A stretch of DNA of 64,000 bases. It comes from Lepidodermella squamata. Its lineage: Eukaryota; Animalia; Gastrotricha. The notes under the pieces were generated by a model. It did no database searches. It was not told where the DNA came from and saw only the letters and a program-made list of their open reading frames with translations. Location of the stretch: positions 372,001 to 436,000 of the forward strand of contig JBLDXI010000043.1 in NCBI GenBank assembly GCA_047495785.1, given 5' to 3'. Numbering within the stretch: the stretch's first letter is position 1; each line of letters opens with the position of its first letter. The translations under genes were made by a program, and so were the position numbers. Below, piece after piece: positions 579 through 31,963 of the stretch.

Positions 579-1962
579 ACAACGAGCGATACCACCATTG
601 TGCCAGATTCAGCAGCGACATTGAAGGCAAGATCGCATACAATGCAATACAATTTCTCAACATTACCTACAGTTACTATTTGAATACTCGAGTCAGCGGA
701 GAATGTTGCCTGAAATTGAGAAATTGCTGGAGGATAGGCGTCTGAATTTGGATGTGAACAGTCGAAACGACGACGGCTTCACGCCACTGATGATTGCAGC
801 TCAGAAAGGATTCAATGAATTCATGAAGCCATTAGTAGAAACGTATGGAGCCAACGTTGACTTGAAAGACGATCAAGGCAGAACAGCAGTGTACATGGCT
901 GCTAAATATGGGCATATCAGAGTTGTGCAAGTCCTCGCCAAAGATTTGAGGGCGAATGTCGAAGCAGCGGAGAATGGCGGAGCGACGCCGTTATACATAG
1001 CTGCTCAGAATGGCCACTTGGACATCGTGAAACTTCTCGCTGATGACTTCAAGGCCAAAGTGAATGCAGCGGCAGATGATGGGGTTACGCCGTTATGGAT
1101 CGCTGCTCAGGAGGGTCACTTGGACATCGTAAAGCTTCTTGTTGGAGACTTCAACGCTGATGTGAATGCAGCGGCGGATGATGGCCTTACACCATTAACA
1201 ATTGCTGCTCAGCAAGGTCACTCGGAAGTCGTAAAGCTTCTCGCTCGAGACTTCAATGCCGAAGTAAATGCGGCGAGGAACGACGGTTCTACGCCGTTGT
1301 TTTTCGCTGCCTTCTACAATCATGCAAAAATCGTGAAGCTCCTCGCTGGAGACTATGAAGCTGATGTGAATGCAGCTAGGAACGACGGTGTCACGCCGTT
1401 ATTCGTCGCTGCTTACAACAGTCACTCGGAAATCGTGAAGCTTCTCGCCGGAGACTTCAAAGCCAACGTGAATGCAGCGACGAATGATGGCGTTACGCCA
1501 TTATTCGTCGCCGCTCAGGAGGGTTACTTCGAAATCGTTAGGCTTCTCACTGAAGACTTCAAAGCCGATGTGAATGCTGCCAGACAAGATGGTGTTACGC
1601 CGTTATTCGTGGCTGCTCAGAATGGCCACTTGGATGTCGTGAAGCTTCTCGTTAGAGACTTCAAAACCGATGTGAATGCATGGGCTGATGATGGTTCTAC
1701 GCCATTATTTATGGCTGCTCAGAATGGTCACTTGGAAGTTGTAAAGCTTCTCGTTGGAGACTTTAACGCCGATGTGAATGCAGCGACGAATGACTGCGTT
1801 ACGCCTTTATTCATAGCTGCTCAGGAGGGTCACTTGGAAGTCGTGAAGCTTCTCGCCGGAGACGTCAAAGCCGATGTGAACGCAGCGAGAAATGATGGTC
1901 TTACGCCGGTATCCGTGGCTGCTCAGATGGGTCACTTGGATATTGTTAATGTTCTCGCATAA
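579..1962 (+). CDS. Kinase-ankyrin family copy A: linker remnant (579-626), GC-AG intron (627-672), ankyrin exon (673-1962, 12 x 34-aa repeats); kinase exons absent from the window
   Basis: ORF 703-1962 is a TPLxxAAxxGHxEIVKLL array. The upstream TSDTTIVPDSAATLK and LLFEYSSQRRMLPE match the linker and exon start of copies B and C. Homology stops at about 579. Confidence 0.85.
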
Positions 1963-1990
1963 TCGTTCTATGCAGAGAAGGCGCGAGATA

Positions 1991-2670
1991 AGGGTGCTGT
2001 CCGTTAATAGACGCCTTCCTATAACGGTCTCCACGCTGTCTTAGCTTTGATTTTAAGGCGCCTGACATAAAGGTAAATGCTCGAATATCACTGGAATGCA
2101 TTTATTGGGATGGCGGGTTTTCTCTGCAGCCATAAACTGCCATTCGATTGTCTCGCCTGATAATACATAATAATAATAAAACAAAAAACCTATCGATGAG
2201 ATCTAGCTATCGATGAGATATGGCTGGAGTTTGTAACCTATAATGCAGATTTCAAATTACACCAGGTATGCTATGAAAGTTAGGATTAACTATGTATTGA
2301 GTTATACTTTTTCTATACACTCGTAATCCAATTTTTCATAAGGTATTGGAAGTAATTAGGGCTGACTGCAGCTGGCTAAAATTTCAAATACGTTATTGTC
2401 CACAAATGACCACAAATGAAATGATTTATTTTACGTCCTCCGGTGGAATTAAAAAGTGGGGACGGCGACGGGCGATCAGCTCGAGTCTGAGGGATCAGTC
2501 GCGAACGTTATTGTCGTCTTTAAATTTACATTTCGGACTGAAAAGTCGCTCGTTGAATTGTCGTGGCTGAAATGTCGCTCTTTTTACTTTAAATATAGGC
2601 TCGTTCGTTGCGGGCTGAATTTTCTGCTCAATAGGCGGGACTGAAAAGTCGGGGCTGAGAGGTCGTGGCC
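1991..2670 (+). repeat. 3' flank of copy A, duplicated at about 19920-20530
   Basis: TCCGTTAATAGACGCCTTC...ATAACGGTCTCCAC through GGGACTGAAAAGTCGGGGCTGAGAGGTCGTGG is colinear at both sites. Confidence 0.9.
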
Positions 2671-3870: not shown

Positions 3871-4443
3871 CATGAATATGAACACCATAGATACAATTCA
3901 GTAGAGATCGCACACTCGCGTAAAAAAGGGTGTTCGCCATGGGCGCCAGATGGTCAGCTGATTCATCAGAGGCTTGAAGGCCTAGTAAACAAAATTTTCG
4001 ATTATTTTTTTGTTGGTTCCGATCGAAGTTTAAAATGAATATAATTTGATGGTTCCAAATAGGCGACATTACTAGGAACACGATGCGGGCTACCTGAACC
4101 ATTAATAAATGGCTTCAATTTAAACTTCATAGATCAGGAAGTTATATTTTTTTTATAATATCGAAACTGTTTATTGTTTATAAAACCAGTTAAAATTCCT
4201 GTAAAAATTTCGAAAAAATAATCAGCGGGTTCCTTGTGATTTCCTCTGTCTGGATCCATCAACCAAACCCTTGGAAAAATCGAAGCGGTGACGGAACCAG
4301 CTAAAAACCATCGAATATTTTGTTTACTTTACCTCCAAGCGCTGATGAATCAGCTGACCATCTGGCGCCCATGGCGTAGCACCCTTTTTCTCGTGAGTAA
4401 GCAGTCTATCCTAAATTATGTCTATGGTCACTGTATTAGCATG
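3871..4443. mobile_element. MITE-like foldback element
   Basis: Perfect 35-bp inverted repeat at 3935-3969 / 4342-4376, with degenerate symmetry extending outward. Confidence 0.75.
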
Positions 4444-5477: not shown

Positions 5478-8400
5478 TCATGATTCATTTGAATCGGCTT
5501 TAGAGTCTCGAGCGAGAAGCGTCGAGATTTCCGAGTGACCATTCGCAGTAGCAATCATTAGCGGCGTAGAGCCATCCTTCCTCGCTGCATTACGTTTGGC
5601 TTTCAAGTCTCCGGCGAGAAGCTTCACGATCTCCAAATGACCGTTCTCAGAAGCCATGAATAATGGTGTTGTACCGTCATGCGTTGCCGCATTAACATCG
5701 GCTTTAAAATCTCGAGCGAGAAGCTTCACGATTTCCGAGTGACCCTTCGCAGCAGCAATCATTAGCGGCGTAGAGCCATCCTTCCTCGCTGCATTACGTT
5801 TAGCTTTGAAGTTTCCGGCGAGAAGCTTCACGATCTCCAAATGACCGTTCTCAGAAGCCATGAATAATGGTGTTGTACCGTCATGCGTTGCCGCATTAAC
5901 ATCAGCTTTAAAATCTCGAGCGAGAAGCTTCACGATTTCCGAGTGACCCTTCGCAGCAGCAATCATTAGCGGCGTAGAGCCATCATTCCTCGCTGCATTA
6001 CGTTTAGCTTTGAAGTTTCCGGCGAGATGCTTAACGATTTCTGAGTGACCATTCGCAGCAGCGACAAATAAAGGCGTTTCACCATCATCTGCCGCTGCAT
6101 CAACATTGGCTTTGAAGTCTCCTGCAAGAAGCTCCACGACCTCCAAATGACCATTGTGAGCGGCAATGCATAACGGCGTAACACCATCATTCTTCGCTGC
6201 ATTAATATCGGCTTCAAAATCTCGAGCGAGAAGCTTCACGATCTCCAAATGACCGTTCTCAGAAGCCATAAAAAATGGTGTTGTACCGTCATGCGTTGCC
6301 GCATTAACATCGCCTTTAAAATCTCGAGCGAGAAGCTTCACGATTTCCGAGTGACCCTTCGCAGCAGCAATCATTAGCGGCGTAGAGCCATCCTTCCTCG
6401 CTGCATTACGTTTGGCTTTCAAGTCTCCGGCGAGAAGCTTCACGATTTCTAAGTGACCATTCTGAGCAGCCATGTATAACGGCGTAGCACCGGTACTTCT
6501 CGCTGCATTAACATTGGCTTTAAAGTCTCGTGCGAGAAGCTTCACAATTTCTAAGTGACCATTCGCAGCAGCGACAAATAAAGGCGTTTCACCATCATCC
6601 GCCGCTGCATCAACATTGGCTTTGAAGTCTCCTGCAAGAAGCTCAACGACCTCCAAATGACCTTTGTGAGCGGCAATGCATAACGGCGTAGCACCATTCT
6701 TCCATGATGCATTCACATTGGCTTTGAATTCTCCAGCGAGAAGCTTCACGATTTCTAAGTGACCATTCTGAGCAGCGATCCATAATGGCGTAGCACCATC
6801 ATCATCTGCCGCCGCATTCACATTGGCTTTTAAGTCTCCCGCGAGAAGCTTAACAACCTCAAAATGACCATTCGCAGCAGCGATCCATAACGGCGTTGCA
6901 CCATCATTCATCTTTGCATTCACATTGGCTTTGAATTCTCCAGCAAGAAGCTTCACGATCTCCAAATGACCGTTCTCAGAAGCGATGTAGAACGGCGTTG
7001 CACCATCATTCATCGCTGCATTAACATTGGCTTTGAAATCTCGAGCGAGAAGCTTCACGATTTCTGAGTGGCCATTCTGAGCAGCCACGAATAACGGCGT
7101 CACACCATCTTGTCTGGAAGCATTCACATCGGCTTTAAAGTCTTCAGCGAGAAGCCTAACGATTTCTGAGTGACCTTTCGCAGCAGCGATCCACAATGGC
7201 GTTGCACCATCATTCATCGCAGCATTAACATTGGCTTTGAAGTCTCCTGCAAGAAGCTTAACGACCTCCAAATGACCGTTTTCAGAAGCGATGTATAACG
7301 GCGTTGCACAATCATCCGTTGCTACATTTACATGGGCTTTGAATTCTCCAGCCAGAAGCTTTACGATCTCCAAATGACCGTTCTCAGAAACGATGTAGAA
7401 CGGCGTTGCACCATCAATCCTCGCTGCATTAACATTAGCTTTGAGGTCCCCTGCGAGAAGCTTCACGATTTCTGAGTGACCATTCGCAGCAGCGATCCAT
7501 AATGGCGTAGTACCGTCATGCGTTGCCGCATTGATATTGGCTTTGAATTCTCCAGCCAGAAGCTTCACGACCTCCAAATGACCGTTGTGAGCGGCGATGT
7601 ATAATGGCGTAATAGCATCATCCATTACTGCATTCACATCCGCTTTGAAATCTCGAGCGAGAACCCTCACAACTTCGCAGTGACCATTATAAGCGGCGAT
7701 GCATAACGGCGTAGTTCCAGAATCTCCCGCCCCATTCACATCGGCTTTGAATTCTCCAGCGAGAAGCTTCACGATTTCTGAGTGACCATTAGCAGCAGCG
7801 ATCCATAATGGCGTAGCACCATCATCATCTGCCGCCGCATTCACAGTGGCTTTTAAGTCTCCCGCGAGAAGCTTAACAACCTCCAAATGACCATTAGCAG
7901 CAGCGATCATTAGCGGCGTAGTGCCTTCATGCGTTGCCGCATTGACATTGGCTCTGAAGTCTCCTGCGAGAAGCTTCACGATCTCCAAATGACCGTTCTG
8001 AGAAGCGATGTATAATGGTGTTATTCCGTCATGCGTTGCTGCATGGGCATCGGCTTTGAAGTCAACAGCGAGAAGCTTCACGATTTCCAAGTGACCATGC
8101 TGAGCAGCGATCATCAGCAGCGTTGTACCGTCATGCTTTGCTGCATTTACATTGGCTTTTAAGTCTCGAGCCAACATTTTCACGATTTCCAAATGATTAT
8201 TTTGAGCGGCGGTCCATAATGCGGCATACAATTTCCCTTTAAATGTTTCAGCGAGAAGCTTCACGATTTTTATGTTGCCGTGCTTTGCAGCAATGTATAA
8301 TGGCGTGGTACCATCACCCGTCGCTGCATTCACGTCAGCGTTGAAATCTCCAGCGAGAAGCTTCACGATTTCCAAATGACCCTCCTGAGCAGCCATGAAT

Positions 8401-11400
8401 AACGCCGTGGCGCCATTTTTCATTGCTGCATTCACATTGGCTTTGAAGTCTCCAGCGAGAAGCTTTACGATTTCCAAGTGACCATTCTGAGCTGCGATGT
8501 GCAACGGCGTTTCTCCGCCGTTTTCGGCTACTTCGATATTTGCACGCAAATCTTTGACAAGAACGCGCACAACTCTGATATGTCCATTTTTAGCGGCTAT
8601 GTATACAGCTGTTCTGCCTTGATCGTCGATCGAGTCAACGTTGGCGCCATACTTTTCTACTAATGGCTTCATGAATTCGTCGAATCCTTCCTGAGCTGCG
8701 ATCATCAGTGGCGTGAAGCCGTCGTCGTTCCGACTGTTCACATCCAAATTAAATCGCCTATCCTCCAGGAGTTTTTCTATTTCAGGCCACATTCTTCGTT
8801 CCCTTGAATATTTGAAAAGCAACTGTAAGTAATGATTTTGAATGTAAAAGGTGTACTGAAGAGTATGCGATTGAGCTTGCCTTCAAAGCCGCACCTGGCT
8901 CGAGTACAGCGGTGGTATCGCTTGTTGGTATGGCTGTAGCTCCGCTGCTGTTTTCTCGATTTGGCATCAAAAAAATACTCTTTAACAAATCGTCTGCTGT
9001 AGCTCGTTTTGTTTTTTCATTTCGGAGCATAGACCACACGAAGTCATGAAACTCAGCAGACCGTTGTTGATTATCTTCGAACTTTGGCTTCGTGCACCTG
9101 AGACAGACGAGATATAGACAAATCATACAATCTACTAAGAAAATAATCCCCTTTCGAAAAGCGCTTCCTGCAATTCAACAAAATAAATAACTTTGTTTTG
9201 TTGAATCGGGGGTTATTTTATGGTTATTTGTAAAATTAAAATTCATTTAAACATGTGTAAAAAACTAAATAAAAGTTTTATTTTTTATTTTGATTTCATT
9301 GAGGGCGAACAAAGAATCCCGCATAAGCCCAAATGAGAAGGAATAGCTATTCTTTTTATGCATTTACACATGTTACAATGTTTTAACCAATCGGACTGCG
9401 AGCAACAACCAAAATAGTAGTAAAGAGTAGTAAATCTGGGAAAGCCTGTTGTATCGTCCAAGTTCAATCAAATCTTAGTCTTAGTTTAATCTCGATCCTT
9501 GTTCTTCCTAATCCTTATTCTTCGTCAAATGTCGTCAATGTAACAGGTTGATGAGGCGAGTTTTTTGTTGCAAGAAGAACTTATTAATCATTATCAAAGA
9601 GTCGATTGCAGACTGCAGTTGCAAAGATCAAACTTCGTAGCTCATAACCTCAACACTAATTATCTATAATTAGGTACTTACTTACTGCTTACTGCAATAC
9701 TTGTAGATTGTAAGGTTTAACTTATTACCTTATAAAACATAAAATAGGCTAATGAATTAGTATTATGTGTTTAGTATTATGCTCTACTCTAATAGAGCTC
9801 TACTCTAAATTCTACCCATAGTGCATAGGGGCAGAAACCAGAAACACAGTAGAAGGTTTTAGTCCTCTGCAAGTAAATTTGAGCTATGGAAAAGTGTGCG
9901 AGGGCCATTTTCGCAACATAAAGAAGTCGTGTAAGAGGCCCGAGGACATCGAGAAAAGAAACAGAACACATCGAGGTTCCATCTTGAGGTAACGCGTAAC
10001 AAACGGACGCTCTACAAACGCCAGCGGCTCATCGGCCGCTGCCGCCAAAATCAAAATTTAAACTTTTCAGTTTTAAACACATGTTTAAATAAATTTTAAT
10101 TTTACCAATAACAAAAATATTTAAATCAAATTATTTAATAAACAAAATTTTATTTTCGTAAATCGGGGGTAAGAAGCGTTTTTCGAAAGGGAAGTATTTT
10201 CTTAGTAGATTAGATTTTGTAGCGTGGGTGGTTCCCCTAAAAACTGATCACAGTCGAGAGCAATTAAAGCTCGGGCATGTTGAAAAACGCACCTTTAGGA
10301 TTAGGAATTAAGGAGTAAAGAGTCATCGCAGTTACCTTCCTACTTGAAACAATTGTGACCACCCCTATCCACTAAAATGTTTGCAGTAAGTTTAGATCTT
10401 TTCATTTCTTTTCCTCGTATAGCTACATTGTGTGACCACTTGCGCGTTCTAATTTTTCTCCAATGCTATACGAGGTTTTGAACGACCAACTCGATTGATA
10501 ACGTCAAACAGCGTTAGAAATGTATTTTTGGGTATTTTTTGCGCCGTATTTCAGTTTGGAAAATCAAATTTTATTAAGGTGGAGTAATTGCACTCTCAGC
10601 GAAATAAAAGAGACAGAACAGCCAAGAAAACCACTCCCGACCTTCTTCAGGGATGAGGTCTCAAAATGTTCGGTAAATTGCTTAATAGTTTGCCATTTGC
10701 CATTTAAACCAAATGATTGGTATAGGATCCAATATTACAGGATAATAAACTAGTTTAATGAGCAAATTGGCAAAAAAGTTGGATTGGGAATCCAACTAAA
10801 TTGCTTATTAGACTACGACATATCTTTTGTGTGGACTGAAGAATCGATAATATCTAGAAATCCTGAAGTGATGACATCGTTGATTAGACTTAAACGTTAA
10901 ACGAAAAGAATCTGCTGTCATCTTTTATTTTCCCGAGAATAACAACATACTCATTCGACATCGAGCAATATGAAGCAATATGCGGTGAAGAAGGATGAGA
11001 GAAAAGCAACCGTGAGAATGATGAATTACTCAAGATCGCGCTGCCCTTGCGTTAGCCAGCTTCGCTACGCATTGACTGATGAAATCCGCTAAGAAAATTG
11101 CGTTTGTGCAACAAGTTTTGTGCAACTGCATTTGTGCAATCTTGTAAATCTTGTATGGTATAACATGAGTGATGAGTTCATATCTGAACCGAGTCGGCCG
11201 AGATGTACGAATTGAAACGAGCCGGAGGCGACTTGAGATGAGTAAATCGAGGACGGCGAGTTCAGATATAAACGATTTACGATACCGTTAACTATCGAAT
11301 TGGTTACTCGAAGCTACTCGACCTAGTTTTTTAGGACAATTCCAGATTTATATAAAAAATGACCTCGCCACGCCCTCTGCACGTTTTCCATTAACCACGA

Positions 11401-12660
11401 GCATAATATCTCGTAACATTTCATAATATTAATCCGTGGCAAACTACTGCGGCAAAAACACTTGCAAAAAATCTCATGGAACGTACGATCATAATGTTTC
11501 ATCCGGAAGTCATAAAGCAACGATCGATTGACCAATCAGCGCGCCCCTAGAAATGCTACTATTTATCTCAAGCACAATGGTAACGCGTAACGTGCGGACG
11601 CCCTCACTGATCTCTGATCTGTTATGTTAGTTTGCTACTAGGAAATAATTAGCTTAAGCCAAGGTTCGAGCGCGTGGCAAGCATTATAAATTCAAAACTT
11701 ACGAAATGATCTCATGTATTGTCGTGAACTAATAAAAAACGTGAAAACGGATTGACCCTAAAAAAATAATGTGAAATTATTACAGGTAGGCGAAAAGTAG
11801 CCAGCTCAAACAGCGTGACTCCAAGAGACCACCAATCACTGGCTGGTGAGTGCTGCTCCTTGTTGAAGATTTCAGGCGCGGCGTAGATCGGTGTTCCGAG
11901 TCCCAACGTTGTAGAGCTATTTGATCTGAAAAGGAGAAGTTTAGCTGATGGGCGTTAACAATAGTAGCTATTGCTTGCCCTCTGTAGATTTTAGCGAATC
12001 CGAAATCGCCCAGCTTGACAGTTTTTCTATCGGCTGAGAGGAAAATATTCGTTGGCTTGATATCGCGATGGAGTGCAGAATATTTGTGTAGACATGCTAT
12101 GGCCGAAACAAGTTGTCGAGCCCAATCGCGAATCAAATCTTCTGGAATGGGTTCTTTTGCCTCCTTAGCTCGATTAATGTAAGCTTGTAAATCTCCGCCG
12201 GGACAAAATTCCATGACGAGGTAGTACATTTCATCATTCAATCGCCACGGTAATCTATGTTGGTTAGTATCATCCAGTTCAAACAAAGGTTCTGGAATAA
12301 ATAAGTAGAATGAACGTGAAATAAAGTGTTTATTGACCTTCGAATGCGTCGAACATTGAGACTATGTTTACGTGCGTCAAATTTCGCAGCTTCACATGCT
12401 GATAGGTACAATCAGTAAGATCAGCATTCAAAATATCGATGTAGAACAAAAACCTCAGTGCGGCCTAATTTGACCAAGCTCTTCGCCTTATCTGGATCTG
12501 GATCATCTCCATATGTTCGTTGAATCGCGCTAAGATTGACCACCTTAATAGCATAGTCCGCAAAATCGTCTGTAACTTTGCAGTGCCAAACTGATCCAAA
12601 TGCGCCACAGCCCAAGCGTTTGATTTTGATGAATTCAGCGAATGATTCAAACCTCTGCAT
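5478..12660 (-). CDS. Kinase-ankyrin family copy B (complete): NEK-like Ser/Thr kinase plus 32 ankyrin repeats. Exons 12660-12454, 12398-12338, 12291-11979, 11925-11784, 11728-11703, 9097-8881, 8822-5478
   Basis: The exons splice in frame. Kinase motifs [43 protein letters not shown] and RATADDLL are present. Exon layout is the same as copy C. The ankyrin exon encodes 1114 aa. Confidence 0.85.
9129..10211. mobile_element. Non-autonomous DNA transposon with long imperfect TIRs inside intron 5 of copy B
   Basis: AATCTACTAAGAAAATA..CCCTTTCGAAAA.CGCTTC at 9129 is mirrored at 10211. A second mirrored block lies at about 9222-9258 / 10077-10112. Confidence 0.8.
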
Positions 12661-12936: not shown

Positions 12937-13195
12937 AGGCGGCCGAGGTTCGAACCACATCTCGTTCAATATTTTTGATAGTCTGATAAGAGACCTCTTA
13001 AAACATTTGTTTACCAAAAATACAAAAACATCTAGTTCGTGAACGTTTAAAAATGGAAAGGAAGTAAGAAGAAATAAAGCCGTGCGAATTTTTGTGTGTT
13101 ATGCGCAATGACTGTTTGTGCCCACCCCTTTTAAGAGGTCTCTTATTTAACTATCAAAAATATTGAACGAGATGGGGTTCGAACCTCGGCCGCCT
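12937..13195. repeat. 67-bp inverted repeat pair containing a Pol III B-box-like GGTTCGAACC (tRNA-derived/MITE-like)
   Basis: 12937-13003 versus 13129-13195, about 4 mismatches. An A-box-like TAGTGG lies at about 12909. Confidence 0.75.
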
Positions 13196-16240: not shown

Positions 16241-17679
16241 ATCTCCTCTGTATTTCTTACCGTAGTTCTACTGTAGTGAGCACGTTGCCATTTAGCACGG
16301 CACAGTAGGCGGACAGAAAAATGACGGTAGCAGATGCCATTTGAACCCTCAATTCAACACTCGAAGCCAGGCACCTTATCAACTGAGCTATCGTGCAGTT
16401 TCGGACATGCTAGTATTTTAAAGGTGTCCCTGAATAGTTTTTCGCGTTGGTTTCAAACAAGACAGTTTCTGGAAACTTTCATTTCTATAGAAGAAAGTTT
16501 TCAAGTGAAAACTATGACACCGTGCTGAAGAACTACCGTTCCGCTGAGCTCTACCGTAGTCGTGGCTAAAACTAAGGTACATATGAGACCCGTCAAGCGA
16601 TTTCGGCCCTATCTCGCGGTGTTCAATCATTCGAAAAGTGGGTTTTGTGCAATTGGGACTATGCGCCAGATGTTGTCTATTCAAATGATTTACAAGGGCG
16701 AAATCGCTTGGCGGGTCCCAAATGTACGGTGTGAATCGGTTTTGCTAGGGGTGTCACCTCTTTTGTGCATAATTTGCTTAACTGGTCTCCTCCGTTTACC
16801 CAGCACCCTTCGCACGGCGCAGGACGCCATCCTGAGATTCCTTCCCACGTCAGAGTCTCCATCCTCGAGCACCGCTGTCGCTTGCCAGGCGTGCCTTTCT
16901 TCATGTGGCGTATTCAACGCCGCTGTGAGGTAACGCCGTTCGCTTAGTGCTGCCGTTGCGTGAGGATATGGAAGGGTACAGTGGATTTTGGTCTTGGCAA
17001 GGTAGGCTAGGTAGAATTACCACAATTGTTCTCGTCAGTCTCAAAAGTTCCCCCCGGCGCTACTGCAGCAGCTTTGCTGCTGCTGTTGCCAATAATAATA
17101 ATAATGATATGGGGAAATGTGCAATATTATTACGCGACGAACCAAGAGAAGCTTGGTACCCTCGGGAGCACAACCTTCATTAAAACTGCAGCAAATCAAA
17201 CCATCTTATTCTTTGACTGTTCCTGACCCCTGACCTCTGTCTTGAACCTAACCGCTTTTCAGTCCCCCATGTTCCCTGTGTGTTTTCAGTCCCTCCATGC
17301 GTTAAAAAGACCTGTTTTAGATTTTTTTCTTGGAACTAATTTAATCCATTAGGCCAAAAAGAATAGTGGTCTTAGGTAAAACACTTACCTGCGAATACGT
17401 GCTCTTAATTTCTCTCGTGCATATGTGAATTGTAGTCAGCATACACTGTCACTCAGCTGTCTGGTAGCTGCTCCGCATTCACCATTTCAGACCTGTGATG
17501 CACCAAGAAACGACATTCAGTCACTCTATGGGAACTATCCATCTATTGATATCGGTGTAATGGAGCATGTAATGGAGTATAGGACTTTGATCAACATCAA
17601 TAAAACAGTCCTTGAGTTGCGTCAATAGGGAGTTTTCAATAAGTTGCTTACGTTCGAAACGACGTCTTAACGCCGGTAT

Positions 17680-17936
17680 TCATTCGAGACCGCATTCGGT
17701 TGAAAATAATACTATCGATGATAATACTTGTGAGAAGCAGCATGAGAAAGAAATCAATCACCTTGGGTCAATCATACGGATGAGTGTGATTTGCATTTGC
17801 CGAGAAGTGATTTTCCGCAAATATGCGTGATTTGGCACGTGACAAGCGCGTAGATAGTACAAATGCACCCGGTCACCATTTGGCTGCCAATGAAAATCAC
17901 CGTGTAGTTCACCTCGGAAGATTTCGGCAGAGAATC
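17680..17936 (-). pseudogene. Inverted, frameshifted 3' fragment (M2-M3 loop to M4) of the Cys-loop gene at 21945-23284
   Basis: DSLPKSSEVNYTVIFIGSQMVTGCICTIYALVTCQ matches 23028-23284, followed by indels. It is truncated by a repeat beginning CCCTGTCGGAAAAAA. Confidence 0.9.
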
Positions 17937-18658: not shown

Positions 18659-19917
18659 TTAGGGGACGGCTGACGACAGGCGATCGGCTTCAGGGGCCGA
18701 CAGATCGGTCGCGAACAACCTGCTTTTGCCCAAAAATTCATAATTTTCGATGCTATTGCACACTAATTGCCATTCTTCCCGGTCTCTGGCAGTTATTTCC
18801 GCTAATTCTAGATCCGCAATTTTGTGAATTTCAGTGCGTCGCATTAACAGGGTCGACTTACGAGGTCTCCCGCGTCTAACTGGCTCGTTTGGGTTTTTAA
18901 TATATTTCACATGAATATCGAACAAACCAATTTTAAGAAGACTCCTTTTCAAGCTATCGGTCCAGCGGGTTGGCGGTTTACCGCGAGGCAAGTACCAACT
19001 CGGGTCGACCGCTTTCCAATGATATATGGCATTCGTGAGACTTTCAGTTTCATACTCGTCTTGGCGAATAATGTGCCCGAAATATTTCAAACGATGCTTT
19101 TCAATCATTTTACTTAATTCCAAAACGTCACAGATCAATCTAATATCGATGTTAGGTATATAATCTGTTCTAAAAAATCCCATAATGGTTCTGAGCCAGC
19201 GCATGAAAGTGACATTTAACCTTTGTTCCTGCTTAGTAGTTAGGTTCCAGGTTTCACAGGCGTAGGTGACGGTAGGAATTACCACACATTTTAAAACTTT
19301 CAATTTTGTGGCTAGGCTTATATGTTTTCTGTTACACATCAGCTTGTTCAGTGCACCAAAACAGCTGCCAGCTTTCGCTAGGCGAGCTTTGATTTCCTCG
19401 TCCATTTTACCGTCTGATGTGATTATACTACCTAAATATTTAAAAGATGTAACTTTCTCCAATAATTTTCCATCTAGTTCCAGTTGGTAATCTTTATCCT
19501 CACCGATCACCATATACTGGATTTTGCTAACACTAATTTTCAGACCAAGCTCCTGGCAGGCCTTGTTGAAGACATCAAGTAGTAATTTAATTTCCTCGTG
19601 GCTCATGCCAATTAAAGTGCCGTCATCTGCAAATGCTATCAGATTCAAAAGCTGCTTACCAGTGATGGGGAAGCCACCCGGGGTGTCCCTCAATTTTTGA
19701 CAAATTTTATCGAACGTCGCGATAAAGAGTAGCGGGGACATTTAGAGCAGACTTAATTTCTTGGGTGCTAATACCATCAATATCAGGAGGAGGGGGTTCC
19801 TCGCTGCCAATGTTTGCATCGCACTCAGCAATGAAGTCGTCAATCTCGCAACCCTCGAGGAGTTCCGAAAAATATTCTTTCATTGCGTCCAGAATTTTGT
19901 CTAAATCCGTAACTAAA
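18659..19917 (-). mobile_element. 5'-truncated, internally deleted non-LTR retrotransposon (RTE-like reverse transcriptase)
   Basis: SPLLF, FADD, FKYLGS, EIKARLAKA, TYACETW, RLKYFGH and RGKPPTRWTD motifs. The sequence jumps from QEIKSAL to SPLLF, deleting the early RT domains. Confidence 0.9.
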
Positions 19918-19919
19918 TG

Positions 19920-20530
19920 AGGGTGCCGCTCCGTTAATAGACGCCTTCTTATAACGGTCTCCACTCAGTCCTAGCAGATTTTATTTGACATAAACGTAGT
20001 ATCACGTAATAAACGTAATAATAAATGCTCGGGATCACGGGAATGCATTTATTGGGATGGCGGATAGCGGCCATTACCTGCAAGCATTCTGCAGCCATAA
20101 CTGACATTCGATTGTCACGCCTGATAATCCGTACATAATAATAATAATTAAACAGAAAACCTATCTAGCTATCGATGAGAAATGGCTGGAGCTTTGTAAC
20201 CTATAATGCAGATTTCAAATTCCAGGTATCAAGGTATGAAATTTGGGATTAGCAATTTATAAAATTATACTTTTTCTCACGTTTTCTATTCACTGGTAAT
20301 CCGATTTTTCAAAAGGTATTGGGAGTATTTGGGCTGACTGTCGCTGGCTGAAATTTCAAATGCGTTATTGTCGTCTTTAAAATGAAATGAACATTTCGAA
20401 CTGAAAAGTCGCTCGCTGAATTGTCGTGGCTGAAATGTCGCACTTTTTACTTTAAATATAGGCTCTTACGTTGCGGGCTAAATTTTCTGCTCAATTGGCG
20501 GGACTGAAAAGTCGGGGCTGAGAGGTCGTG
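19920..20530 (+). repeat. Second copy of the kinase-ankyrin copy A 3' flank
   Basis: Colinear with 1991-2670 but lacks the 104-bp insert. Confidence 0.9.
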
Positions 20531-20940
20531 GAACAGAATGTCATACGAACCTGAAAACTTCCTGAAAATGAAAATGAGAATGAAAATGATACAATTCACC
20601 TAGAACTGCTAACCGCTGGGTTATTTTGAAGCCATATTCGAAAAGCTGAAGTCCACCTTTAGTCTAATGGATGATATGTTTTGTTGTTGCTTTTGAGAGA
20701 GCGTTACGTGGCTCGACAAGCAAGAAGAAAAATAAGTAATTTGGGGAAGATATGTAAAGTTATTAGAAATATCGAACTAAAGAGTACCGTCAGTTGGGGC
20801 TATCCGGACGGCGAAAAAAATTACCCCTTGATTTTTTTGCATTTTTACACGTTACAGAAGGTCATGATTCCAATGGCACCAGGGCAGGTGTGGGGCTATT
20901 AATGATACATAAATATTCAATTCAAATTTTACTGATATGT

Positions 20941-21944: not shown

Positions 21945-23284
21945 ATGAAAGACCAAATGATTTTGCCATGGCTTGCATTTCTCAGCTCTCTGATACTAGC
22001 TTCGTCAGCTCAAGAATATGCCGGGGAACAACTCGAGGTCGATAACAACTACTCACCTCCAGGGGAAGCTTTCAAACAATCCGTTATCAAGCGGTGCGAT
22101 TTGAAGACTAAAACTCGCCCGTCGAAAGATTTTGACGATGTTGCAAATGTCACCCTAGAGTCTTTACCATTACGATTCACCGGAATCTACGACAAAGAAC
22201 AAACGTTAGCCTTTCCTACTTCTGATTTATCGATGAACGCCCACGTTTTCTCAAGGTACAAGGTACTCAATGTTGATGGAATTTGACTTCACATGGTATC
22301 ACCCCTGCGCGTTTTGGACGGCGAACGAAAGCCGGCTTCGGGCATTCGAGTTGCCGGCTGAAGACACGTGGTACCCGAAGGTGCAGCACATCAACGCAAA
22401 TGACGATGTTTCGAAGCTAACCAAATAAACTATTCCACTTAATCAACTTTTCCTTATTAGAAAAATGCAGAGAAATGGAGACAAGCGGCAAGGTTTTCGT
22501 AACAAGCGAAGGTATGATGCTGCTGCCCGTAGTTTTGGAGGTCAATTCATACTGTCCGCTGAAGTAATGAAGCAATATTTGCAGCCTTAACCTTTTTTAA
22601 TCACTTCATTTCAGACTGGCGAAATTTCCATTCGACAGCCAAAATTGTCGTGTCGAAATCGAATCTTGGTACCCGTCTATAGATGTTATTTTGAAACTCC
22701 CACCGGGGGTTGACAGTCTCGATGACAGAATCAGTGATAATGTTTTGTCTGCTGAGAACGACATTTGGGAGTTGGATGGGACTAACGCGAGCATATTCAC
22801 GCACTCATACAACGGGGATGCGGCTGCTTTTGTGTACTACCGGGTGGCTTACGAATTCAGTTACCGTCGCAAGTCAGCGTCTTACGTGATGAACATTTTC
22901 CTGCCCAGTTTTGCCCTTCTGTCTCTAATGCTGGCGGTGTGGGTGATGCCGCCGGAACACCCAGATCGGCCTGGTTTCTGCATGACTGTCGTTTTAGCCT
23001 ACACAGTTCTGCTGTCTATTGTCTCAGATTCTTTGCCGAAATCCTCCGAGGTGAACTACACGCTGATTTTCATGGGCGGTCAAATGGTGACCGGATGCGT
23101 TTGTACCATCTACGCGCTTGTGACGTGCCAACTCGCGCATATTCCACTTTTTAAGAAGCGGAAATTCACTTTTCGGCAACTGCAAATGACACTCATCCGT
23201 GTGATTGATTTGGCTTTCTTTCTCATGCTGCTTCTCACAAGTATGATAATGGATGGTGTAATTTTCAACCGAATGCGGTCTTGA
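21945..23284 (+). CDS. Divergent Cys-loop ligand-gated ion channel subunit 1. Exons about 21945-22204, 22263-~22410, ~22461-22563, 22615-23284; intron 2 junction unresolved
   Basis: Signal peptide, TRP, loop A WYPKVQHIN, Cys-loop CPLKLAKFPFDSQNC (C-x13-C), pre-M1 RR and four TM helices. Confidence 0.85.
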
Positions 23285-23701
23285 AAGAATAAATAGTCGA
23301 TGAACAAATGGCATGATGTTGAGACACCTCAAGTCGGCGGCTTGACCGGTGAACGCTAAACAATATGGATGATTTTGCGCTAAAACGAACTGACTAGATC
23401 TAGGAACGCTCAGCAAAATTAGCTCAACAAAAAAAAAACAAATATGTAGTTAACAAAATTGTACACGACCGACGGAACCTTGCGGTCAATCGCCATGAAG
23501 ACCTTTCGCCCTTCTCAGACATCTCAACATGAACACCCTCGACTAGGCTAGGGAATATATCGACCAATTCTTTAGGCAGACTACGCTTTGCTGATTGTTG
23601 ATTCATCTTAAATTGTCAATTGTGTACGCAATTTATCTAACCAATTTGAAATACTTATACAGTCAGCCCCAAGTTAGCCATTTTTTCTCAGAGCTTACTA
23701 A

Positions 23702-24607: not shown

Positions 24608-27230
24608 CCCTTTAGCTACCAGCAAGTTGTAACAAGTGGTAGCGGTGTTTGCTATCCGCTATCGGCTAGCTGCTTTGGATATTTTTTTCCAGGTTTTTTC
24701 TTAAACCACCTATTGACCCTGCCTGGAGGACCATCCTCGTCGATTGGCGGCGCATTCGCGTCGATTACGTAACAATGGCGCAATTTCGCGTGCGCGCATG
24801 TAGTTGATTACTGATTAACCCGTGACGTCGATGTGGTAATACATCTGGTTTACGGGTTTACACGAGCAATAATTGCACATCCTCACGCGAAATGCGGATA
24901 CACGATATACAATTGGCCCGAGTTTATACGTACTTCAATTTTCGGTCATTTTTCATGCGTAAAATTATAAAAACAAATTGGAAGTGGTCGGGAATGTGCC
25001 TCAGTGATGAGATAACAATGATTTCTGTTTTGACGCATAAAAAGAAGAAGAAGTCTAAATCGAACAAGGCCAACTATCGACCCGTGGGTATGGGTGAACA
25101 CGTAGGCAAAGTCCTGGAGAGAATACTTGCTGAACTAGTCGTAAAAACCGCGATAGCTAACGGAGTAATACCTCCAGAACAAGCCGCCTTCCTGTCAGGC
25201 TGCGGCACAACCGATACCCAACTGTCCGTGGTAATCGACATCATCTCCGCGATAAACGACAGAAAAGATTTCATCCTCCGCCAAACTGATGTTAGTGGGG
25301 CGTTCGACAGAGTGGACAGATCTCTTCTTCTCGACATTCTTTGGAAATCGGGCATACAGGGACAAGTTCACGCTATGATCCGATCATTCCTGACAGACAG
25401 ATACTTCCGTGTCTTGGTGGCCGGGGCGTCGTCGAGCCTTCGATCTGAAGATGCAGGTATCTGCCAAGGTAGTGCACTGGGGCCATCCCTCTGGCTTGTC
25501 TGGTATAGCGGAATCAGCCGATCGGTGTCCAAAATCGTCGACCAGCCCAATTACCACCCACCTGAGCCGTACACCTTCGCCGATGACTTCAACCTGGGAA
25601 GCACGAACCAATCAGATGTCGACATTGGAGAAGAGAAGGCTATGCAGTGGGCGAGAGCTCACAGAGTCTCGATGGACCCGAAGAAGAGGATAGATACAAG
25701 GTTCTCTTATCCACGTTTCAACTGTGGAAGAAGAAGACTGAATGAAGATAGCTCGCTTGAAAGCACCAACCCCTCGAAAGCGGAAACGGCCACTACAACG
25801 CTACTGGGCCTAGTACTCGACACCGGTCTATCAATGGAGGAATGCATGACCAAGAAGATCGATCAGGCCAACAGGGCAATCACGCAGCTCCTAAGACTGA
25901 GACCTTACTTATCGACACGCCAGCTCGAAAATGCTTACAAGACCTACGTTCTACCATACCTCGAATTCGCCATGGTACCATATACATTCGCGGCGTCGGC
26001 TAGCACCTTGGAGAAACTCGATGCAGTTCAAAACAGATTTGTTAAGATGACGGAAGCCAAATTGACACCGCTGGGCCATCGCAGATTCGTCGGGGTCATG
26101 ACGTATCTCTACAAAACTATGGTAGCAGGTCGGGGGACGAAACAAGTCCGCTCGAAATTTATAAAAATCCCGAAGCCGAATACAAGAACGAGGGCAGCGA
26201 GCGAGAAACACCACCATCAACTACAGCTCGCAAAATCGTCGAAGAACAGGGTCGACACGGCACCCTTTCGAAGGATGCAAGAGATCGTCAATCAATGGAA
26301 CGACCTACCACGCGATACCTTCCCTGACACCGTCAACATCACAATATTTAAAGAAAAGATGAACGTCCTAGGGCGTCGGCTATAAGCCTACTAATGATAA
26401 CTGTGTGCGCCTGAATTTTTTCGTAAATAAAAAAAAAAAAAACACAGAAATATTGTTGTTCACATCTCCTAACATTGAAACGTGGTGGCTATAAAAAATA
26501 AAAAGCTCGCATTTAGTGAAGTAGCTTATCGAGCGCAGTCGATTTTCCTGATTAGTTTTCAGCATCAGTCATGTGATACCTTGCGATGCCGACGGCTGTC
26601 TTCCTTGACCCTTGATCGCCAATAAAATTGCGGCCGTTTTTACTGGTTTCGTTTTCGTGTTTTACAGGTTATCCGAAGGTGTTCTATGCCAGAAAATTGC
26701 CCTTTTACGGACATTGCTGAACAAGCGCTTACTTCTGGGCGATGAACAAAATCGAAGCGAAATGCACGAATTTGTCCTCACATGCGATTCGATTTTTGTC
26801 TTTTTTTATGCTTCCCGATCATATTTTATTGATTGCTGCAAATAAAAAATTCGATAGGTTTATTAGAAACAGGAAACAGATGTAGGCCTAGAAAATAAAC
26901 TAAACTTACCCTTTTTGTTGTCAAATAACAAGGGGCTGCTGCTAAGGTGTCTTAGATCCAGATATCATTTGATTAATTTTTTAAATAACCCCCCCATTTA
27001 CCATAACGCGTAAACTCGTATAACCATACGTGTTGACCCGGCAGCGATTTTCACGTGTTAACGCGGGGTTTTCACGAAAAAATATCAGTCTTGCAATTGA
27101 TCAAGATTTTATTCACACACTACGTATTATACACCCCAATGATACGTGTAAACACATTTTTCGCCGAAAAAACTGTAACGTGTATATACATTCGGTCGAA
27201 CATGTAAGTAGTTGCCTGGTAGCTAAAGGG
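24608..27230. mobile_element. Non-autonomous piggyBac element hosting a nested LINE
   Basis: TTAA-CCCTTTAGCTACCAG ... CTGGTAGCTAAAGGG-TTAA: perfect 15-bp TIRs and TTAA TSD. Confidence 0.9.
25030..26442 (+). mobile_element. 5'-truncated non-LTR retrotransposon (CR1/L2/Jockey-group RT) with poly(A) tail
   Basis: NYRPV, GKVLER, EQAAF, DVSGAFDRV, QGSALGP, FADD and LLGL motifs; A-tract at 26429-26442. Confidence 0.92.
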
Positions 27231-27916
27231 TTAATGGTTGTTATCAAATGTGCTATACTTATAGCAGGTGTATTTAGTATATACCTTAAGTACTGCTATG
27301 CGACATCTGAGGATAGCCTCGATATTTTTATATTCGTATCTTAATCTGATTAATCTCAAATAAGTACAGGGGGAGGGGTACCTGTCTTCCAGGCCCCAAA
27401 AATCCACAGAGGAACCTTCGGTCAGAAAAATACCTACATCATGTGCCCCCACCTCGAGGTTCCTACGTCCTCCACTGATCGTGTGAAGTTCCACAGGAGT
27501 CATTAGCAATAACGCCTGTGCAACTACCAGCAACATAAGTGCAATCGAATACACTATACCAACGTTGTTCTTTCCACAGACGTTTGTTATTTGATGTCGT
27601 CTGACAAGCCCAATAAGGCAGAGCAGAGCGACGGCGCGAAGCTTTCTGGAGTTTCGAAAAGCGATGGTAATCAACTCGCGGGAGAGTTAGCAGCGAACCT
27701 GCCGGTGCATGGATCTGACCAGGTCGAAGAGGCTAATCGGTCAAACAACTTCGGCGTTGATTTGGACGCGGGATTTTCATCTATCGTCAATCCAGCTGAA
27801 CGGAGCGTCGACTTTGCAGCAATATCCCTTTCAAGTTGTGGAAGTGCAAACATGGATGTTTCATGCGCGGCGATTCCTCCGAGGAAGTAAGGGATTAAAC
27901 TAAATTTGTCTATATC

Positions 27917-28230: not shown

Positions 28231-28378
28231 GGCCGGTCTATATAATATCAAATTGCCACAGGGGAAAGGAAGAGATAGGAATACATGTAGGTATTATTTT
28301 ATCCGCGTATGAGAATCTCTGTTTCTATGGAATTCAATATGTATTCTCAAACTCAAATCCTCTCCGAATAGAACGACC

Positions 28379-31300
28379 CAGAAGTTTAAATCCTTTGCTG
28401 AATTTACCAAAGTCGCATGCCTGGGCAGTGGCTCCTACGGATCCGTTTGGCACTGCGAAGCTGATTTTGCTGACTACGCTGTTAAGGTGGTCAATCTCAG
28501 CGCAATTCGACGAAAGTATCGAAATAATACAAATATGGCTGAGAGACTAGTCAAATTAGGCCGCAGTGAGGTTTCTGGTTAAATCGTGAAACGATATTTT
28601 ATGAATGCCCGTTATGTTCATCAGCATGTCAAACTGCTGGATTTGAGGCACGCAAATATAGTCTATGTTTACGACGCATTTGAAGGTCTGGTAAAACTCG
28701 CATCCCACTTCCAATATCATATTAAATCTTCAAATCATTTCAGAACCTTTGTTTCAAATTGATGATACGAACCAACATGAGTTACCATGGCTATTGACTG
28801 ATGAGATGTACTACCTCGTCATGGAATTTTGTCCTGGCGGAGATTTAGAAGCATACATCAAACGATCTAAGGAGGCAAACGAGCCCATTCCAGAAGATTT
28901 GATTCGCGATTGGGCTCGGCAACTTGTTTCGGCCATAATGTGTCTGCAAAAATGTTCTGCACTTCATCGCGATATAAAGCCGAAGAATATTTTCCTTTCA
29001 GCCGATAAAAAAACTGTTAAGCTTGGAGATTTTGGATTCGCCAAAATCTACAAAGGGTTAGCATCTTCTACTGTGGTGCGGGGAGGTTGATAGCTACCGT
29101 CTTCTTTTTCAGATCACATAGCGGTACAACCCTTGGACTAGGAACCCCTATCTATTCCGCGCCTGAAATCTTCAACAATGAGCAGCACTCGCCAGCCAGT
29201 GATTGGTGGTCTCTTGGAGTCACGCTGTTTGAGCTGGCTAATTATCGCCTACCCGTAAATAATATTCTATTAGTTATTAAATGTTATTATAGTTATCGTC
29301 CGGTGGTACAAAAATTATCAATAACAATGTTATTGTACTGGGCAAAATACAAATAACAGGCGTTTAAGGTGGATTTTTTAAATTTTATTGGTCAAATTGC
29401 CCAACTCGACCATTCACCCCTGACTGTACTAGCCAAAAGAACACGCATGTTTCTTATTTCTTAAATAATAAATAAGGAAAAACCAGGCAATTTTTGCTCT
29501 ACGAGATTCAAATCATCATTGCAGTATCATTACTTTATTGCAGTTATTGAAATTTTCAAAATTTTCAAAACGTATGGCATGTGACAAAGGTCCACAGGAG
29601 GGCGGAACTGAAAGAGGGTGACGAATTCATCGACATTTCTGTTCGACTACTAGCTTGCATTGTTGATTGCTCTCGTTGGGATCGTCCAAAGGCTGCTCCT
29701 TCTCCGAACTAGGAGAAGCATGGGCGAGGCGCTCCACCAGCTTCAACATTCGGTAATTGGAAAGAGCACTTATTGACGCATCGCCCTTTCACCAAAGCAT
29801 CGATTGAATGCTCGCCCAACTTCACCCGCTTGTAGAGCGCTCTTTTGATCGCAGTTCGCAGTTCGCAGTTCGGAATTGAACTTCCTCCAGAAAACCGATT
29901 GTTAGGCGCGGATAGCGTTGTAGTCCGGCAGGAAGACCAGCAACAAGACACAATCGACTTGCCAGAACAGCGTACGCGCTTGGTCCGCATCTTCATATCT
30001 TCATCTTCTTCTTCAGCTTCGAAGCCATGGGTTCCAATGAGGCGGGGATAAGCATAAGCAATTTTCCGTTAAAGGAACCGCAAAACTGTTGCGTGAATTA
30101 AATCGCGGTATCGAAAAATGAATAAATTGCAATGATTTTAGCAAAACGTTATTGGAAATTGGAAATATTAGGGTGGATTTTTTAATTTCTGAAAATAACG
30201 CCTGTTATCTAGCTATCCTACCCGGTCCGGCTCGTTTTGTCCCACCGAACGATATTGGCCGCGAGCCGGACGCCTCTCGGCCAATATCGGAGTACAATAA
30301 CTGCGTTATGTACTCCTTCGAATCCAATTTATACTATTATTATAGTTATTAAAAGTATTTTACTTCTTCCAGTTCAAAACAACACACGAGATCATTTTGT
30401 AAGTCCAAGACATTTTACTGCTAGCCCTCAACCAGTTGGCTGCTAGGAACCTTGGCATAGTGCAAAACTATTTAATATAACTCTCTCGTATTCAGGGGCT
30501 CGACGCAGCCGAAATTTGATGGTGACCCTCGATTGTCACCAGATTTTCGTGAATTCGTGCTGTCTATGTTACGAAAAGAGAAATCAAGACGTGCTACAGC
30601 TGACGTTTTGGTGGAAAGCTCTTTTTTAACGCTACAACCGGGGGCCAGACGCGTAAATATGTCAGTCCCAACGAGCGATTCCACAGTTGTACTCGATCCA
30701 GGAGCGGCTTTGAAGGCAAGATCGCGTACAATGCAGTACAACAATCAGAATTCTATTATTATTACTTAGGTGTTATTTAAATACTCAAGGCGACGAAACA
30801 TGTTGCCCGAAATTGCGAAGTTGCTGGAGGATGGGCGACTGAATTTGGACGTGAACAGTCGGAACGACGACGGCCTAACGCCACTGATGATTGCAGCACA
30901 AGAAGGATTCGATGAGTTTATGAAGCCATTAGTTAAAGCGTATGGAGCCAACGTTGAGTTAGTGGACGATCAAGGCAGAACAGCAGTGTACATAGCTGCT
31001 AAAAACGGGCATTTCAAAGTTGTGCGAATTCTTGCCAGAGATCTAAGGGCTAATGTCGAAACAGCTGAGAACAGCGGAGCGACACCGTTGTGGATCGCTG
31101 CTCAGAATGGTCACTTGGAAATCGTGAAGCTTCTCGTTGAAGACTTCAAAGCCGATGTGAACGCAGCGGCGGATGATGGTGCTACGCCGTTATACATCGC
31201 TGCTCAGAACGGTCACTTGGAAATTGTGAAGCTTCTCGCTGGAGACTTTAACGCCGATGTGAATGCAGCAAGGAATGATGGTGTTACGCCGTTATTTATG

Positions 31301-31963
31301 GCTGCTCAGGAGGGTCACTTGGAAATTGTGAAGCTTCTCGCTGGAGACTTCAACGCCGATGTGAATACAGCAAGGAATGATGGTGTTACGCCGTTATTTA
31401 TGGCTGCTCAGAAACGTCACCTGGAAATTGTGAAGCTTCTAGCTGGAGATTTCAACGCCGATGTGAACGCAGCGGCGGATGATGGTGTTACGCCGTTATA
31501 CATGACTGCTCAGAATGGTTACTTGGGAATTGTGAAACTTCTCGCTGGAGACTACAAAGCCGATGTGAATTCTGCGACAAAAGATGGTGTTACGCCGTTA
31601 TGGATCGCTGCTCAGAATGGTCACTTGGAAATTGTGAAGCTTCTCGTTGGAGACTTCAAAGCCGATGTGAACGCAGCGGCGGATGATGGTGCTACGCCGT
31701 TATTTATGGCTGCTCAGAACGGTCACTTGGAAATTTTGAAGCTTCTCGCTGGAGACTTCAACGCCGATGTGAATTTAGCAAGGAATGATGGTGTTACGCC
31801 GTTATTTATGGCTGCTCAGGAGGGTCACTTGGAAATCGTGAAGCTTCTAGCTGGAGAGTTCAACGCCGACATGAATACAGCAAGGAATGATGGGGTTACG
31901 CCGTTATTTATGGCTACTCAGAAACGTCACCTGGAAATTGTGAAGCTTCTAGCTGGAGATTGA
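28379..31963 (+). CDS. Kinase-ankyrin family copy C: NEK-like kinase plus 11 ankyrin repeats. Exons ~28379-28570, 28625-28685, 28744-29056, 29113-29254, 30373-30398, 30496-30715, 30770-31963; start codon not found
   Basis: GSGSYG, YAVK, HRDIKPKNIFL, KLGDFG, GTPIYSAPE and SDWWSLG are present. All six introns are at the same positions and phases as in copy B. Confidence 0.85.
29297..30337. mobile_element. About 1-kb insertion in intron 4 of copy C
   Basis: The homologous intron in copy B is 55 nt. Flanking direct repeat TATTATAGTTAT at 29285-29296 / 30338-30349, and mirrored ATAACAGGCGTT and TTATTGTACT motifs near the ends. Confidence 0.6.

What the first reader, a model, noticed from the sequence alone, without database searches (positions are those of the whole stretch)
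579..31963. Candidate new system: clustered NEK-like kinases fused to hypervariable, DARPin-like ankyrin arrays
Seen: the 'kinase' and 'ankyrin' ORFs splice in frame into one gene (copies B and C; copy A keeps the linker). Each array is one intronless exon of near-identical 102-bp/34-aa units, and repeat number differs sharply (12, 32, 11). The scaffold (TPL, AA, GH.EIVKLL..DF.A.VNA) is nearly fixed. Variation concentrates at the hairpin (AAD/ARN/ATH/AMN/SWK/ARQ), the residue before TPL, the two after TPL (W/Y/F/M/C/H) and the two before GH (QN/QE/AN/AK/EN/HN/YN/FY). Established: these positions line the ankyrin binding groove and largely coincide with those randomised in DARPin libraries. Internally conserved repeats with hypervariable surface sites are typical of fungal NLR sensor domains, and the kinase+ANK proteins RIPK4/ANKK1 and DAPK use other kinase groups and fixed, diverged repeats. 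Inference: a recombination-diversified intracellular sensor wired to a kinase output, such as innate immunity, symbiont recognition or allorecognition.
Basis: partly seen in the sequence, partly recalled or inferred. Interest (0 to 1): 0.9.

Follow-up and report, generated by a model that had tools for sequence, protein, structure and literature searches.

The report
Kinases with shuffling ankyrin arrays
Two intact spliced genes (plus a third whose kinase half is not in the window) of an unidentified small invertebrate join an active-looking NEK-like protein kinase to 11-32 ankyrin repeats that swap pieces by recombination and vary mostly on their binding face, which suits a diversifying sensor, but no ligand or immune role is shown.

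Summary
Observation confirmed. Copies B (7 exons, 1436 aa) and C (7-8 exons) splice without stops from an intact NEK-like kinase into one ankyrin exon across a GC-AG intron. An RNA-like run shows that junction and four other predicted junctions in family members. Copy A has only the linker exon and its array in this window. Repeat numbers are 12/32/11. Corrections: the repeats are not near-identical (75-86% DNA, 68-77% protein), and the variable sites match only 4 of 6 DARPin positions; two of the most variable are fixed in DARPins. Seven binding-face positions hold 52% of all variation (21% expected). Repeats recombine (p=0.0005), and A and B share a 100-nt tract at 96%. Face dN/dS is 1.0-1.4 against 0.3 elsewhere; the signal above 1 weakens as recombination is allowed (p 0.0002 to 0.06). 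Closest parallels: Giardia Nek-ankyrin kinases (architecture) and fungal NLRs with internally conserved repeats (repeat dynamics). It is a member of neither. One kinase relative was found in another run. The scan already met this family many times elsewhere in this genome. Immune sensing is plausible, not shown.

The parts
572..626 (+). Copy A linker exon (homologous to the last 55 nt of exon 6 of B/C; phase-2 acceptor in front); upstream exons not in the window
627..672 (+). Copy A GC-AG intron (46 nt)
673..1962 (+). Copy A ankyrin exon: helical cap plus 12 repeats (array 778-1959)
1531..1630 (+). Tract of repeats A8/A9 shared at 96% with B16/B17 (exchange between genes)
5478..8822 (-). Copy B exon 7: helical cap plus 32 ankyrin repeats (one of 27 aa, two of 35 aa), recent block duplications among B21-B31
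7067..7166 (-). Tract of repeats B16/B17 shared with A8/A9
8881..9097 (-). Copy B exon 6: kinase subdomains X-XI and linker, followed by GC-AG intron 8880-8823
11703..11728 (-). Copy B exon 5 (26-nt micro-exon)
   Evidence: homologous micro-exon spliced in X2
11784..11925 (-). Copy B exon 4: activation segment to subdomain IX
11979..12291 (-). Copy B exon 3: HRD and DFG motifs; GC donor follows
12338..12398 (-). Copy B exon 2
12454..12660 (-). Copy B exon 1: start codon, glycine loop, catalytic lysine, alpha-C glutamate
27594..27886 (+). Copy C probable first coding exon (98 aa, no known domain), joins exon 1 in frame
   Evidence: covered by an X2 contig 27584-27880 with empty flanks; its joint was not displayed
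28372..28570 (+). Copy C exon 1
28625..28685 (+). Copy C exon 2
28744..29056 (+). Copy C exon 3 (HRD, DFG)
29113..29254 (+). Copy C exon 4
30373..30398 (+). Copy C exon 5 (26-nt micro-exon)
30496..30715 (+). Copy C exon 6: end of kinase and linker, then GC-AG intron 30716-30769
30770..31963 (+). Copy C exon 7: helical cap plus 11 ankyrin repeats (array 30875-31960), folds as a regular ankyrin solenoid

Best explanation
A lineage-specific, expanded family of soluble, catalytically intact NEK-like kinases whose single-exon ankyrin array is a changeable binding module. Shown: the fusion, the intact kinase under purifying selection, a fixed cap and two first repeats, a constrained scaffold, and arrays remodelled by block duplication, chimeric repeats and exchange between genes, with change concentrated on the hairpin and inner-helix face. 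Inferred: the concave face binds a partner protein, and binding recruits, clusters or releases the kinase so that it phosphorylates itself or the partner. Further inferred, and least secure: the partners are variable foreign proteins (pathogen or symbiont), so the family is a bank of sensors, as with fungal NLRs with internally conserved repeats.
For: Splicing; all kinase motifs present; kinase dN/dS B vs C 0.285; no transmembrane or signal stretch (maximum 19-residue hydropathy 1.37); face positions 31, 32, 1, 5, 6, 9, 10 hold 171 of 329 non-consensus residues; 39 different face signatures among 44 repeats when counted per gene; recombination test p=0.0005, third positions only p 0.003-0.02; A/B tract 86 of 90 against a mean of 64; M8 vs M8a favours a class at dN/dS 1.5-1.8 holding positions 1, 5, 31; hundreds of paralogous contigs in DNA run X1; the same repeat dynamics mark fungal immune NLRs (PMC13449251).
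Against: Face dN/dS falls to 1.0-1.1 with separate IQ-TREE trees per half repeat, and DARPin-equivalent positions give 0.8-1.0; M8 vs M8a is not significant with three segments (p 0.06); the face set was partly chosen after seeing the data; unrelated ankyrin arrays show the same face-over-back variability (P0006, P0073, P0075, P0093); no NOD, TIR or death domain; no ligand, induction or population data.
Confidence: 0.45

Rival explanations
1. Giardia-like targeting family: the ankyrin array localises each kinase or picks endogenous substrates (cytoskeleton, cilia, cell cycle); face residues drift under relaxed constraint after duplication and arrays turn over by unequal crossing-over, without a foreign ligand.
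For: NEK-like kinase; Giardia Neks with 1-26 repeats turn over fast and a repeat deletion changed localisation (PMC3218828); face dN/dS near 1 in the recombination-aware fits.
Against: Simulations with true face dN/dS 1 and one breakpoint gave 0.8-1.29 on a single tree, below the observed 1.41 (10 runs); position 5 keeps mostly large aromatic or hydrophobic residues while changing; exchange between genes would blur fixed endogenous targeting.
Confidence: 0.33
2. Largely neutral expansion: an intronless tandem exon is prone to slippage and conversion; only folding is selected, and the face varies because it is the part of any ankyrin repeat that tolerates change.
For: Face-biased variability is generic to ankyrin arrays; LINE fragments and repeats surround and sit inside the genes; earlier scan notes report broken and dead-kinase copies elsewhere.
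Against: B and C are intact over 1436 and 815 codons, kinase dN/dS 0.285, scaffold 0.3, family members are spliced in RNA; site class above 1 in three of four fits.
Confidence: 0.14
3. Self/non-self (allorecognition or gamete) system in which kinase-ankyrin alleles read polymorphic self proteins.
For: Fungal het genes with internally conserved repeats work this way (PMC13449251).
Against: No linked polymorphic ligand gene seen in the window; the proteins are intracellular and no tissue-fusion biology is known for this unidentified animal.
Confidence: 0.08

Closest known systems
Giardia Nek-ankyrin kinases and Protein 21.1 (PMC3218828)
   Same: N-terminal Nek-type kinase followed by a variable ankyrin array (1-26 repeats); large family with fast gene turnover; ankyrin-only relatives.
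   Different: Giardia repeats are divergent TALM-type and most kinases are dead; here the repeats are a 34-aa TPL-x-x-AA-x-x-GH type with 73-86% identity to their own consensus, both full kinases look active, the genes have six or seven introns, and the host is an animal. No orthology shown: convergent.
Fungal NLRs with high internal conservation (HNWD het-e/het-d; ANK and TPR types) (PMC13449251)
   Same: Internally conserved solenoid repeats, a few hypervariable surface positions, repeat exchange between genes, neighbourhood of transposable elements.
   Different: No NACHT or NB-ARC switch and no death effector; a kinase instead. Repeat identity is lower than HNWD (80-100%). Allele length polymorphism and function are untested here.
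RIPK4 / ANKK1 (RIPK5) (PMC10492769)
   Same: Kinase, intermediate region, about 11 C-terminal ankyrin repeats.
   Different: RIP-type (TKL) kinase, vertebrate, single copy, fixed repeat number. No RIPK among the 60 best solved-structure hits of exon 3.
DARPins (designed)
   Same: Best structural and sequence matches of the array include DARPins (6MOL, 42% identity); cap-internal-cap layout; four of six randomised columns vary here (unit positions 32, 1, 9, 10).
   Different: Natural; 34-aa unit; the hairpin Asp and the TPLH His, fixed in DARPins, are among the most variable here (positions 31, 5), while two DARPin-randomised columns are conserved (A30 39/44, D33 39/44).

Membership tests
Active protein kinase | Gly loop, catalytic Lys, alpha-C Glu, HRDxKxxN, DFG, APE, subdomain IX Asp | tested here: met
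   All present in B and C; activity itself not assayed.
NEK (NIMA-related) kinases | Nearest characterised kinases are NEKs | tested here: met
   Exon 3: ULK3 6e-14, NEK1 3e-13, NEK2, NEK7 top in solved structures; named hits are NIMA-related, crab Nek6. Margin over ULK is nil, so 'NEK-like' only.
NEK (NIMA-related) kinases | Supported grouping with, or orthology to, a named NEK | tested here: inconclusive
   Tree of 34 kinase domains is unresolved at the base; B+C 99/97, nearest P0143, long branches. No RIPK or ULK reference rows were available.
Giardia Nek-ankyrin family | N-terminal Nek kinase plus variable ankyrin array | tested here: met
Giardia Nek-ankyrin family | TALM-type repeats | tested here: not met
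   Consensus is TPLF/Y/W (T44, P42, L41 of 44).
RIPK4/ANKK1 | RIP-type (TKL) kinase domain | tested here: not met
   No RIPK in the top 60 hits of exon 3 or exon 4.
NLR with high internal conservation | NACHT or NB-ARC domain | tested here: not met
   The models hold only kinase, short linker and ankyrin repeats.
NLR with high internal conservation | Repeat similarity to consensus of 0.7 or more | tested here: met
   0.73-0.77 over all 34-aa repeats, 0.78-0.86 over core repeats; my measure approximates T-REKS Psim.
NLR with high internal conservation | Repeat exchange within and between genes | tested here: met
NLR with high internal conservation | Diversifying selection at a few surface codons | tested here: inconclusive
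   p 0.0002 (one tree), 0.0005-0.013 (halves), 0.06 (thirds); face dN/dS 1.0-1.4.
NLR with high internal conservation | Allelic repeat-number polymorphism and balancing selection | not testable with these tools
Innate immune sensor | Binds a foreign ligand or is induced by infection and triggers defence | not testable with these tools
   No ligand or challenge data.

The most novel reading that the evidence does not exclude
An animal lineage has built a large germline repertoire of intracellular sensors from a NEK-like kinase wired directly to a recombining ankyrin array, with new specificities made by repeat shuffling within and between genes: NLR-style diversification with a kinase output and no nucleotide-binding switch.
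Probability: 0.3. Interest if true: 0.85.

Novelty: new variant of a known kind. Interest (0 to 1): 0.55.

Why it matters
The Nek-ankyrin pairing was described as not seen outside Giardia (PMC3218828, 2011), and shuffling, internally conserved sensor repeats are studied mainly in fungal NLRs. An animal family combining the two would be a second origin of the architecture and a test of whether repeat shuffling builds recognition repertoires without a NOD switch. The arrays are also a natural ankyrin library that varies two positions that DARPin design holds fixed. If the variation is only relaxed constraint, it is an ordinary lineage-specific expansion.

Tried and rejected
Separate kinase and ankyrin genes: rejected by in-frame models and spliced joints in X2. 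Alternative exon 5/6 choices for B (26-nt intron, acceptor at 9167): rejected by homology with C and the micro-exon joint. C cut short by the LINE at 32.1-34.5 kb: unlikely, as its stop and the next seven bases match those of B. Search with the head of B's ankyrin exon returned only generic ankyrin proteins. Exon 3 against 1.84 billion representatives gave no close relative except P0143. Metagenome scan gave only generic kinases, none with such repeats nearby. Atlas search of C's first exon was blank. The neighbouring ammonium transporter did not identify the organism (best 42% to molluscs). One search's fixed-class fits did not converge and were replaced; the first recombination test was inflated by same-codon sites and was replaced. 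Kohl 2003 was not held, so the DARPin randomised numbering rests on my knowledge plus the alignments.
Full report
Setting. The window is from an animal with short introns (46-58 nt in these genes); neighbours include an ammonium transporter, Cys-loop channel and class C receptor-like genes and LINE fragments. The organism could not be identified; earlier scan notes guess nematode, rotifer or gastrotrich (unchecked).

Gene structure. B on the minus strand and C on the plus strand each assemble from seven homologous exons into a stop-free frame, with the same six intron positions and phases. B is 1436 aa. C has a probable extra first exon (27594-27886) that joins in frame, giving 815 aa. The junction between linker and ankyrin exon is a GC-AG intron in A, B and C. 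In C and B reading through it meets a stop, so it must be spliced. Copy A has only a 55-nt exon homologous to the end of exon 6, behind a good acceptor, and no kinase sequence in the first 571 bases; whether A is a kinase gene cannot be told from this window.

Transcript evidence. Run X2, guessed to be RNA, covers the exons of C, is empty over several intronic bins, and shows joints at the predicted introns: 28683>28742 (GT..AG), 28565>28623, 29051>29112, 29253>30496 with a 27-letter insert matching the micro-exon, and 30715>30771 and 30715>30800 at the kinase-linker/ankyrin junction. The DNA-like run X1 shows none of these. Most X2 contigs are 86-95% alike, so this proves the fusion for family members, not for copy C itself. 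X1 laid 515 contigs, 325 of them under 95% alike, so the family is large (some of these lie on intronic repeats).

Kinase. All catalytic motifs are present in B and C. The two are 73% identical, dN/dS 0.285. Exon 3 is nearest to ULK3, NEK1, NEK2 and NEK7 among solved structures, with no RIPK in the top 60; named database hits are NIMA-related. A tree did not resolve a placement, so 'NEK-like' is as far as the data go. One true subfamily relative was found: P0143 (Logan SRR21279729), 40% identical, sharing two family-specific inserts, the start position and the position and phase of intron 3. Its contig ends in that intron, so an ankyrin array there is untested.

Repeats. Counts are 12, 32 and 11. 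A helical cap and repeats 1-2 are positional orthologues (78-91% DNA identity between copies). C's exon folds as a regular ankyrin solenoid (pLDDT 86) and matches DARPins and ankyrin-R/B. The 44 core repeats are internally conserved but not near-identical: 0.75-0.86 DNA within genes, synonymous difference about 0.42. Seven positions (31, 32, 1, 5, 6, 9, 10 of the unit) hold 52% of non-consensus residues against 21% expected. By alignment to DARPins these are the hairpin and the inner-helix face. Four coincide with DARPin-randomised columns; positions 31 and 5 are the hairpin Asp and TPLH His that DARPins fix, and two DARPin-randomised columns are conserved here (numbering from my knowledge, checked against the alignments). 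Face-over-back variability also appears in unrelated arrays, so the pattern alone is not diagnostic.

How the arrays change. Recent block duplications are plain (B24/28/30 at 98-99%, B21/26, B29/31, C3-6 vs C8-11). Several repeats are chimeras, for example B27 with a B22-like front and a B29-like back. An incompatibility test with codon-block permutation gives p=0.0005, and p 0.003-0.02 on third positions alone. A and B share about 100 nt with four mismatches across A8/A9 and B16/B17; the best 90-nt window is 86/90 against a mean of 64 (s.d. 7), while flanks differ. That is exchange between genes, directly or through a third copy.

Selection. My own codon-model fits: scaffold dN/dS about 0.3; face 1.28-1.41 on one tree (p 0.006-0.05), 1.0-1.1 with IQ-TREE half-repeat trees, 1.41 with FastTree half trees; DARPin-equivalent columns 0.8-1.0. 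Ten simulations with true value 1 and one breakpoint gave 0.8-1.29. M8 against M8a, which needs no prior choice of sites, gives p 0.0002 (one tree), 0.0005-0.013 (halves) and 0.06 (thirds), with a class at 1.5-1.8 holding positions 1, 5 and usually 31. So the face is at least free of purifying selection and probably under mild diversifying selection; more breakpoints could account for the excess.

Mechanism. Shown: soluble, intact kinase, short linker, capped array with a constrained scaffold and a reshuffled face. Inferred from ankyrin biology: the groove binds a protein and thereby places or switches the kinase. I put 0.45 on variable foreign partners (sensor), 0.33 on endogenous targeting as in Giardia, 0.14 on largely neutral turnover and 0.08 on allorecognition.

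Comparison. In Giardia 133 of 198 Neks carry 1-26 ankyrin repeats, a pairing then reported for no other species (PMC3218828); those repeats are TALM-type and most kinases are dead, so this family is convergent, not a member. Fungal NLRs with internally conserved repeats show hypervariable sites, exchange between genes and transposon neighbourhoods (PMC13449251), but need a NOD domain, absent here. RIPK4/ANKK1 share the layout with another kinase group (PMC10492769). I found no paper on such a family in an invertebrate; the library is incomplete.

Earlier scan notes report the same family, including dead-kinase and tandem-kinase forms, on many other pieces of this genome. They are unchecked AI notes and did not set the score. 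As the operators required, database searches and the fold used single exons by reference; the joined protein was used only inside local scripts (frame check, comparison with proteins already fetched, tree) and was not sent to any search or fold tool.

Verdict: real, transcribed, recombining kinase-ankyrin family; a new variant of known kinds; function open.

Noticed in passing
window 703, 8792 (- strand), 30800 region: All three ankyrin exons keep an in-frame ATG ten codons in (M-L/W-P-E-I), which could start an ankyrin-only isoform like Giardia Protein 21.1; it may just be a conserved cap residue.
   Followed up: no
L001:602-1205: Kinase from Logan run SRR21279729 (P0143) shares two inserts and the intron-3 site with these kinases: the subfamily exists in another short-intron organism.
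   Followed up: partly
window 43719-46149, 48617-51119, 57486-59954 (- strand): Three tandem class C GPCR-like genes (ANF-receptor ligand domain in 45175-46149), each in long exons; two are about 80% alike in the ligand domain.
   Followed up: partly
window 21945-23284 and 46957-48268 (+): Two compact, divergent Cys-loop ligand-gated channel-like genes that appear to end shortly after the fourth helix, with few introns.
   Followed up: partly
window 39088-40236 (-): Ammonium transporter, nearly intronless, only about 42% identical to the best animal hits.
   Followed up: partly
window 18659-19741 (-), 24892-26385 (+), 32406-34488 (-): Three different non-LTR retrotransposon RT fragments flank the kinase-ankyrin genes; the last ends in an (AAAT)n tail about 100 nt after C's stop.
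   Followed up: partly
window 9129-9292 and 10046-10211; 3884-4021 and 4292-4428; 12937-13003 and 13129-13195: Inverted repeat pairs (75-94%), probably small DNA transposons; the first lies in intron 5 of B.
   Followed up: no
window 1988-2668 and 19917-20531; 17677-17936 and 23027-23291: Dispersed repeats, one directly behind copy A's stop.
   Followed up: no
window 52298-52804 (-) and 61614-62045 (+): Two further short ankyrin genes of a different, 33-aa type.
   Followed up: partly
window 53408-57167 (-): Probable secreted multi-exon gene with a vWA-like start, chitin-binding-like Cys modules and EGF repeats (read by eye, not tested beyond a blank Pfam scan of 56334-57167).
   Followed up: no
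window 11978, 8880, 627, 30716: GC-AG introns are used at four of the fourteen introns modelled; the site of intron 3 is GC in B and GT in C.
   Followed up: yes
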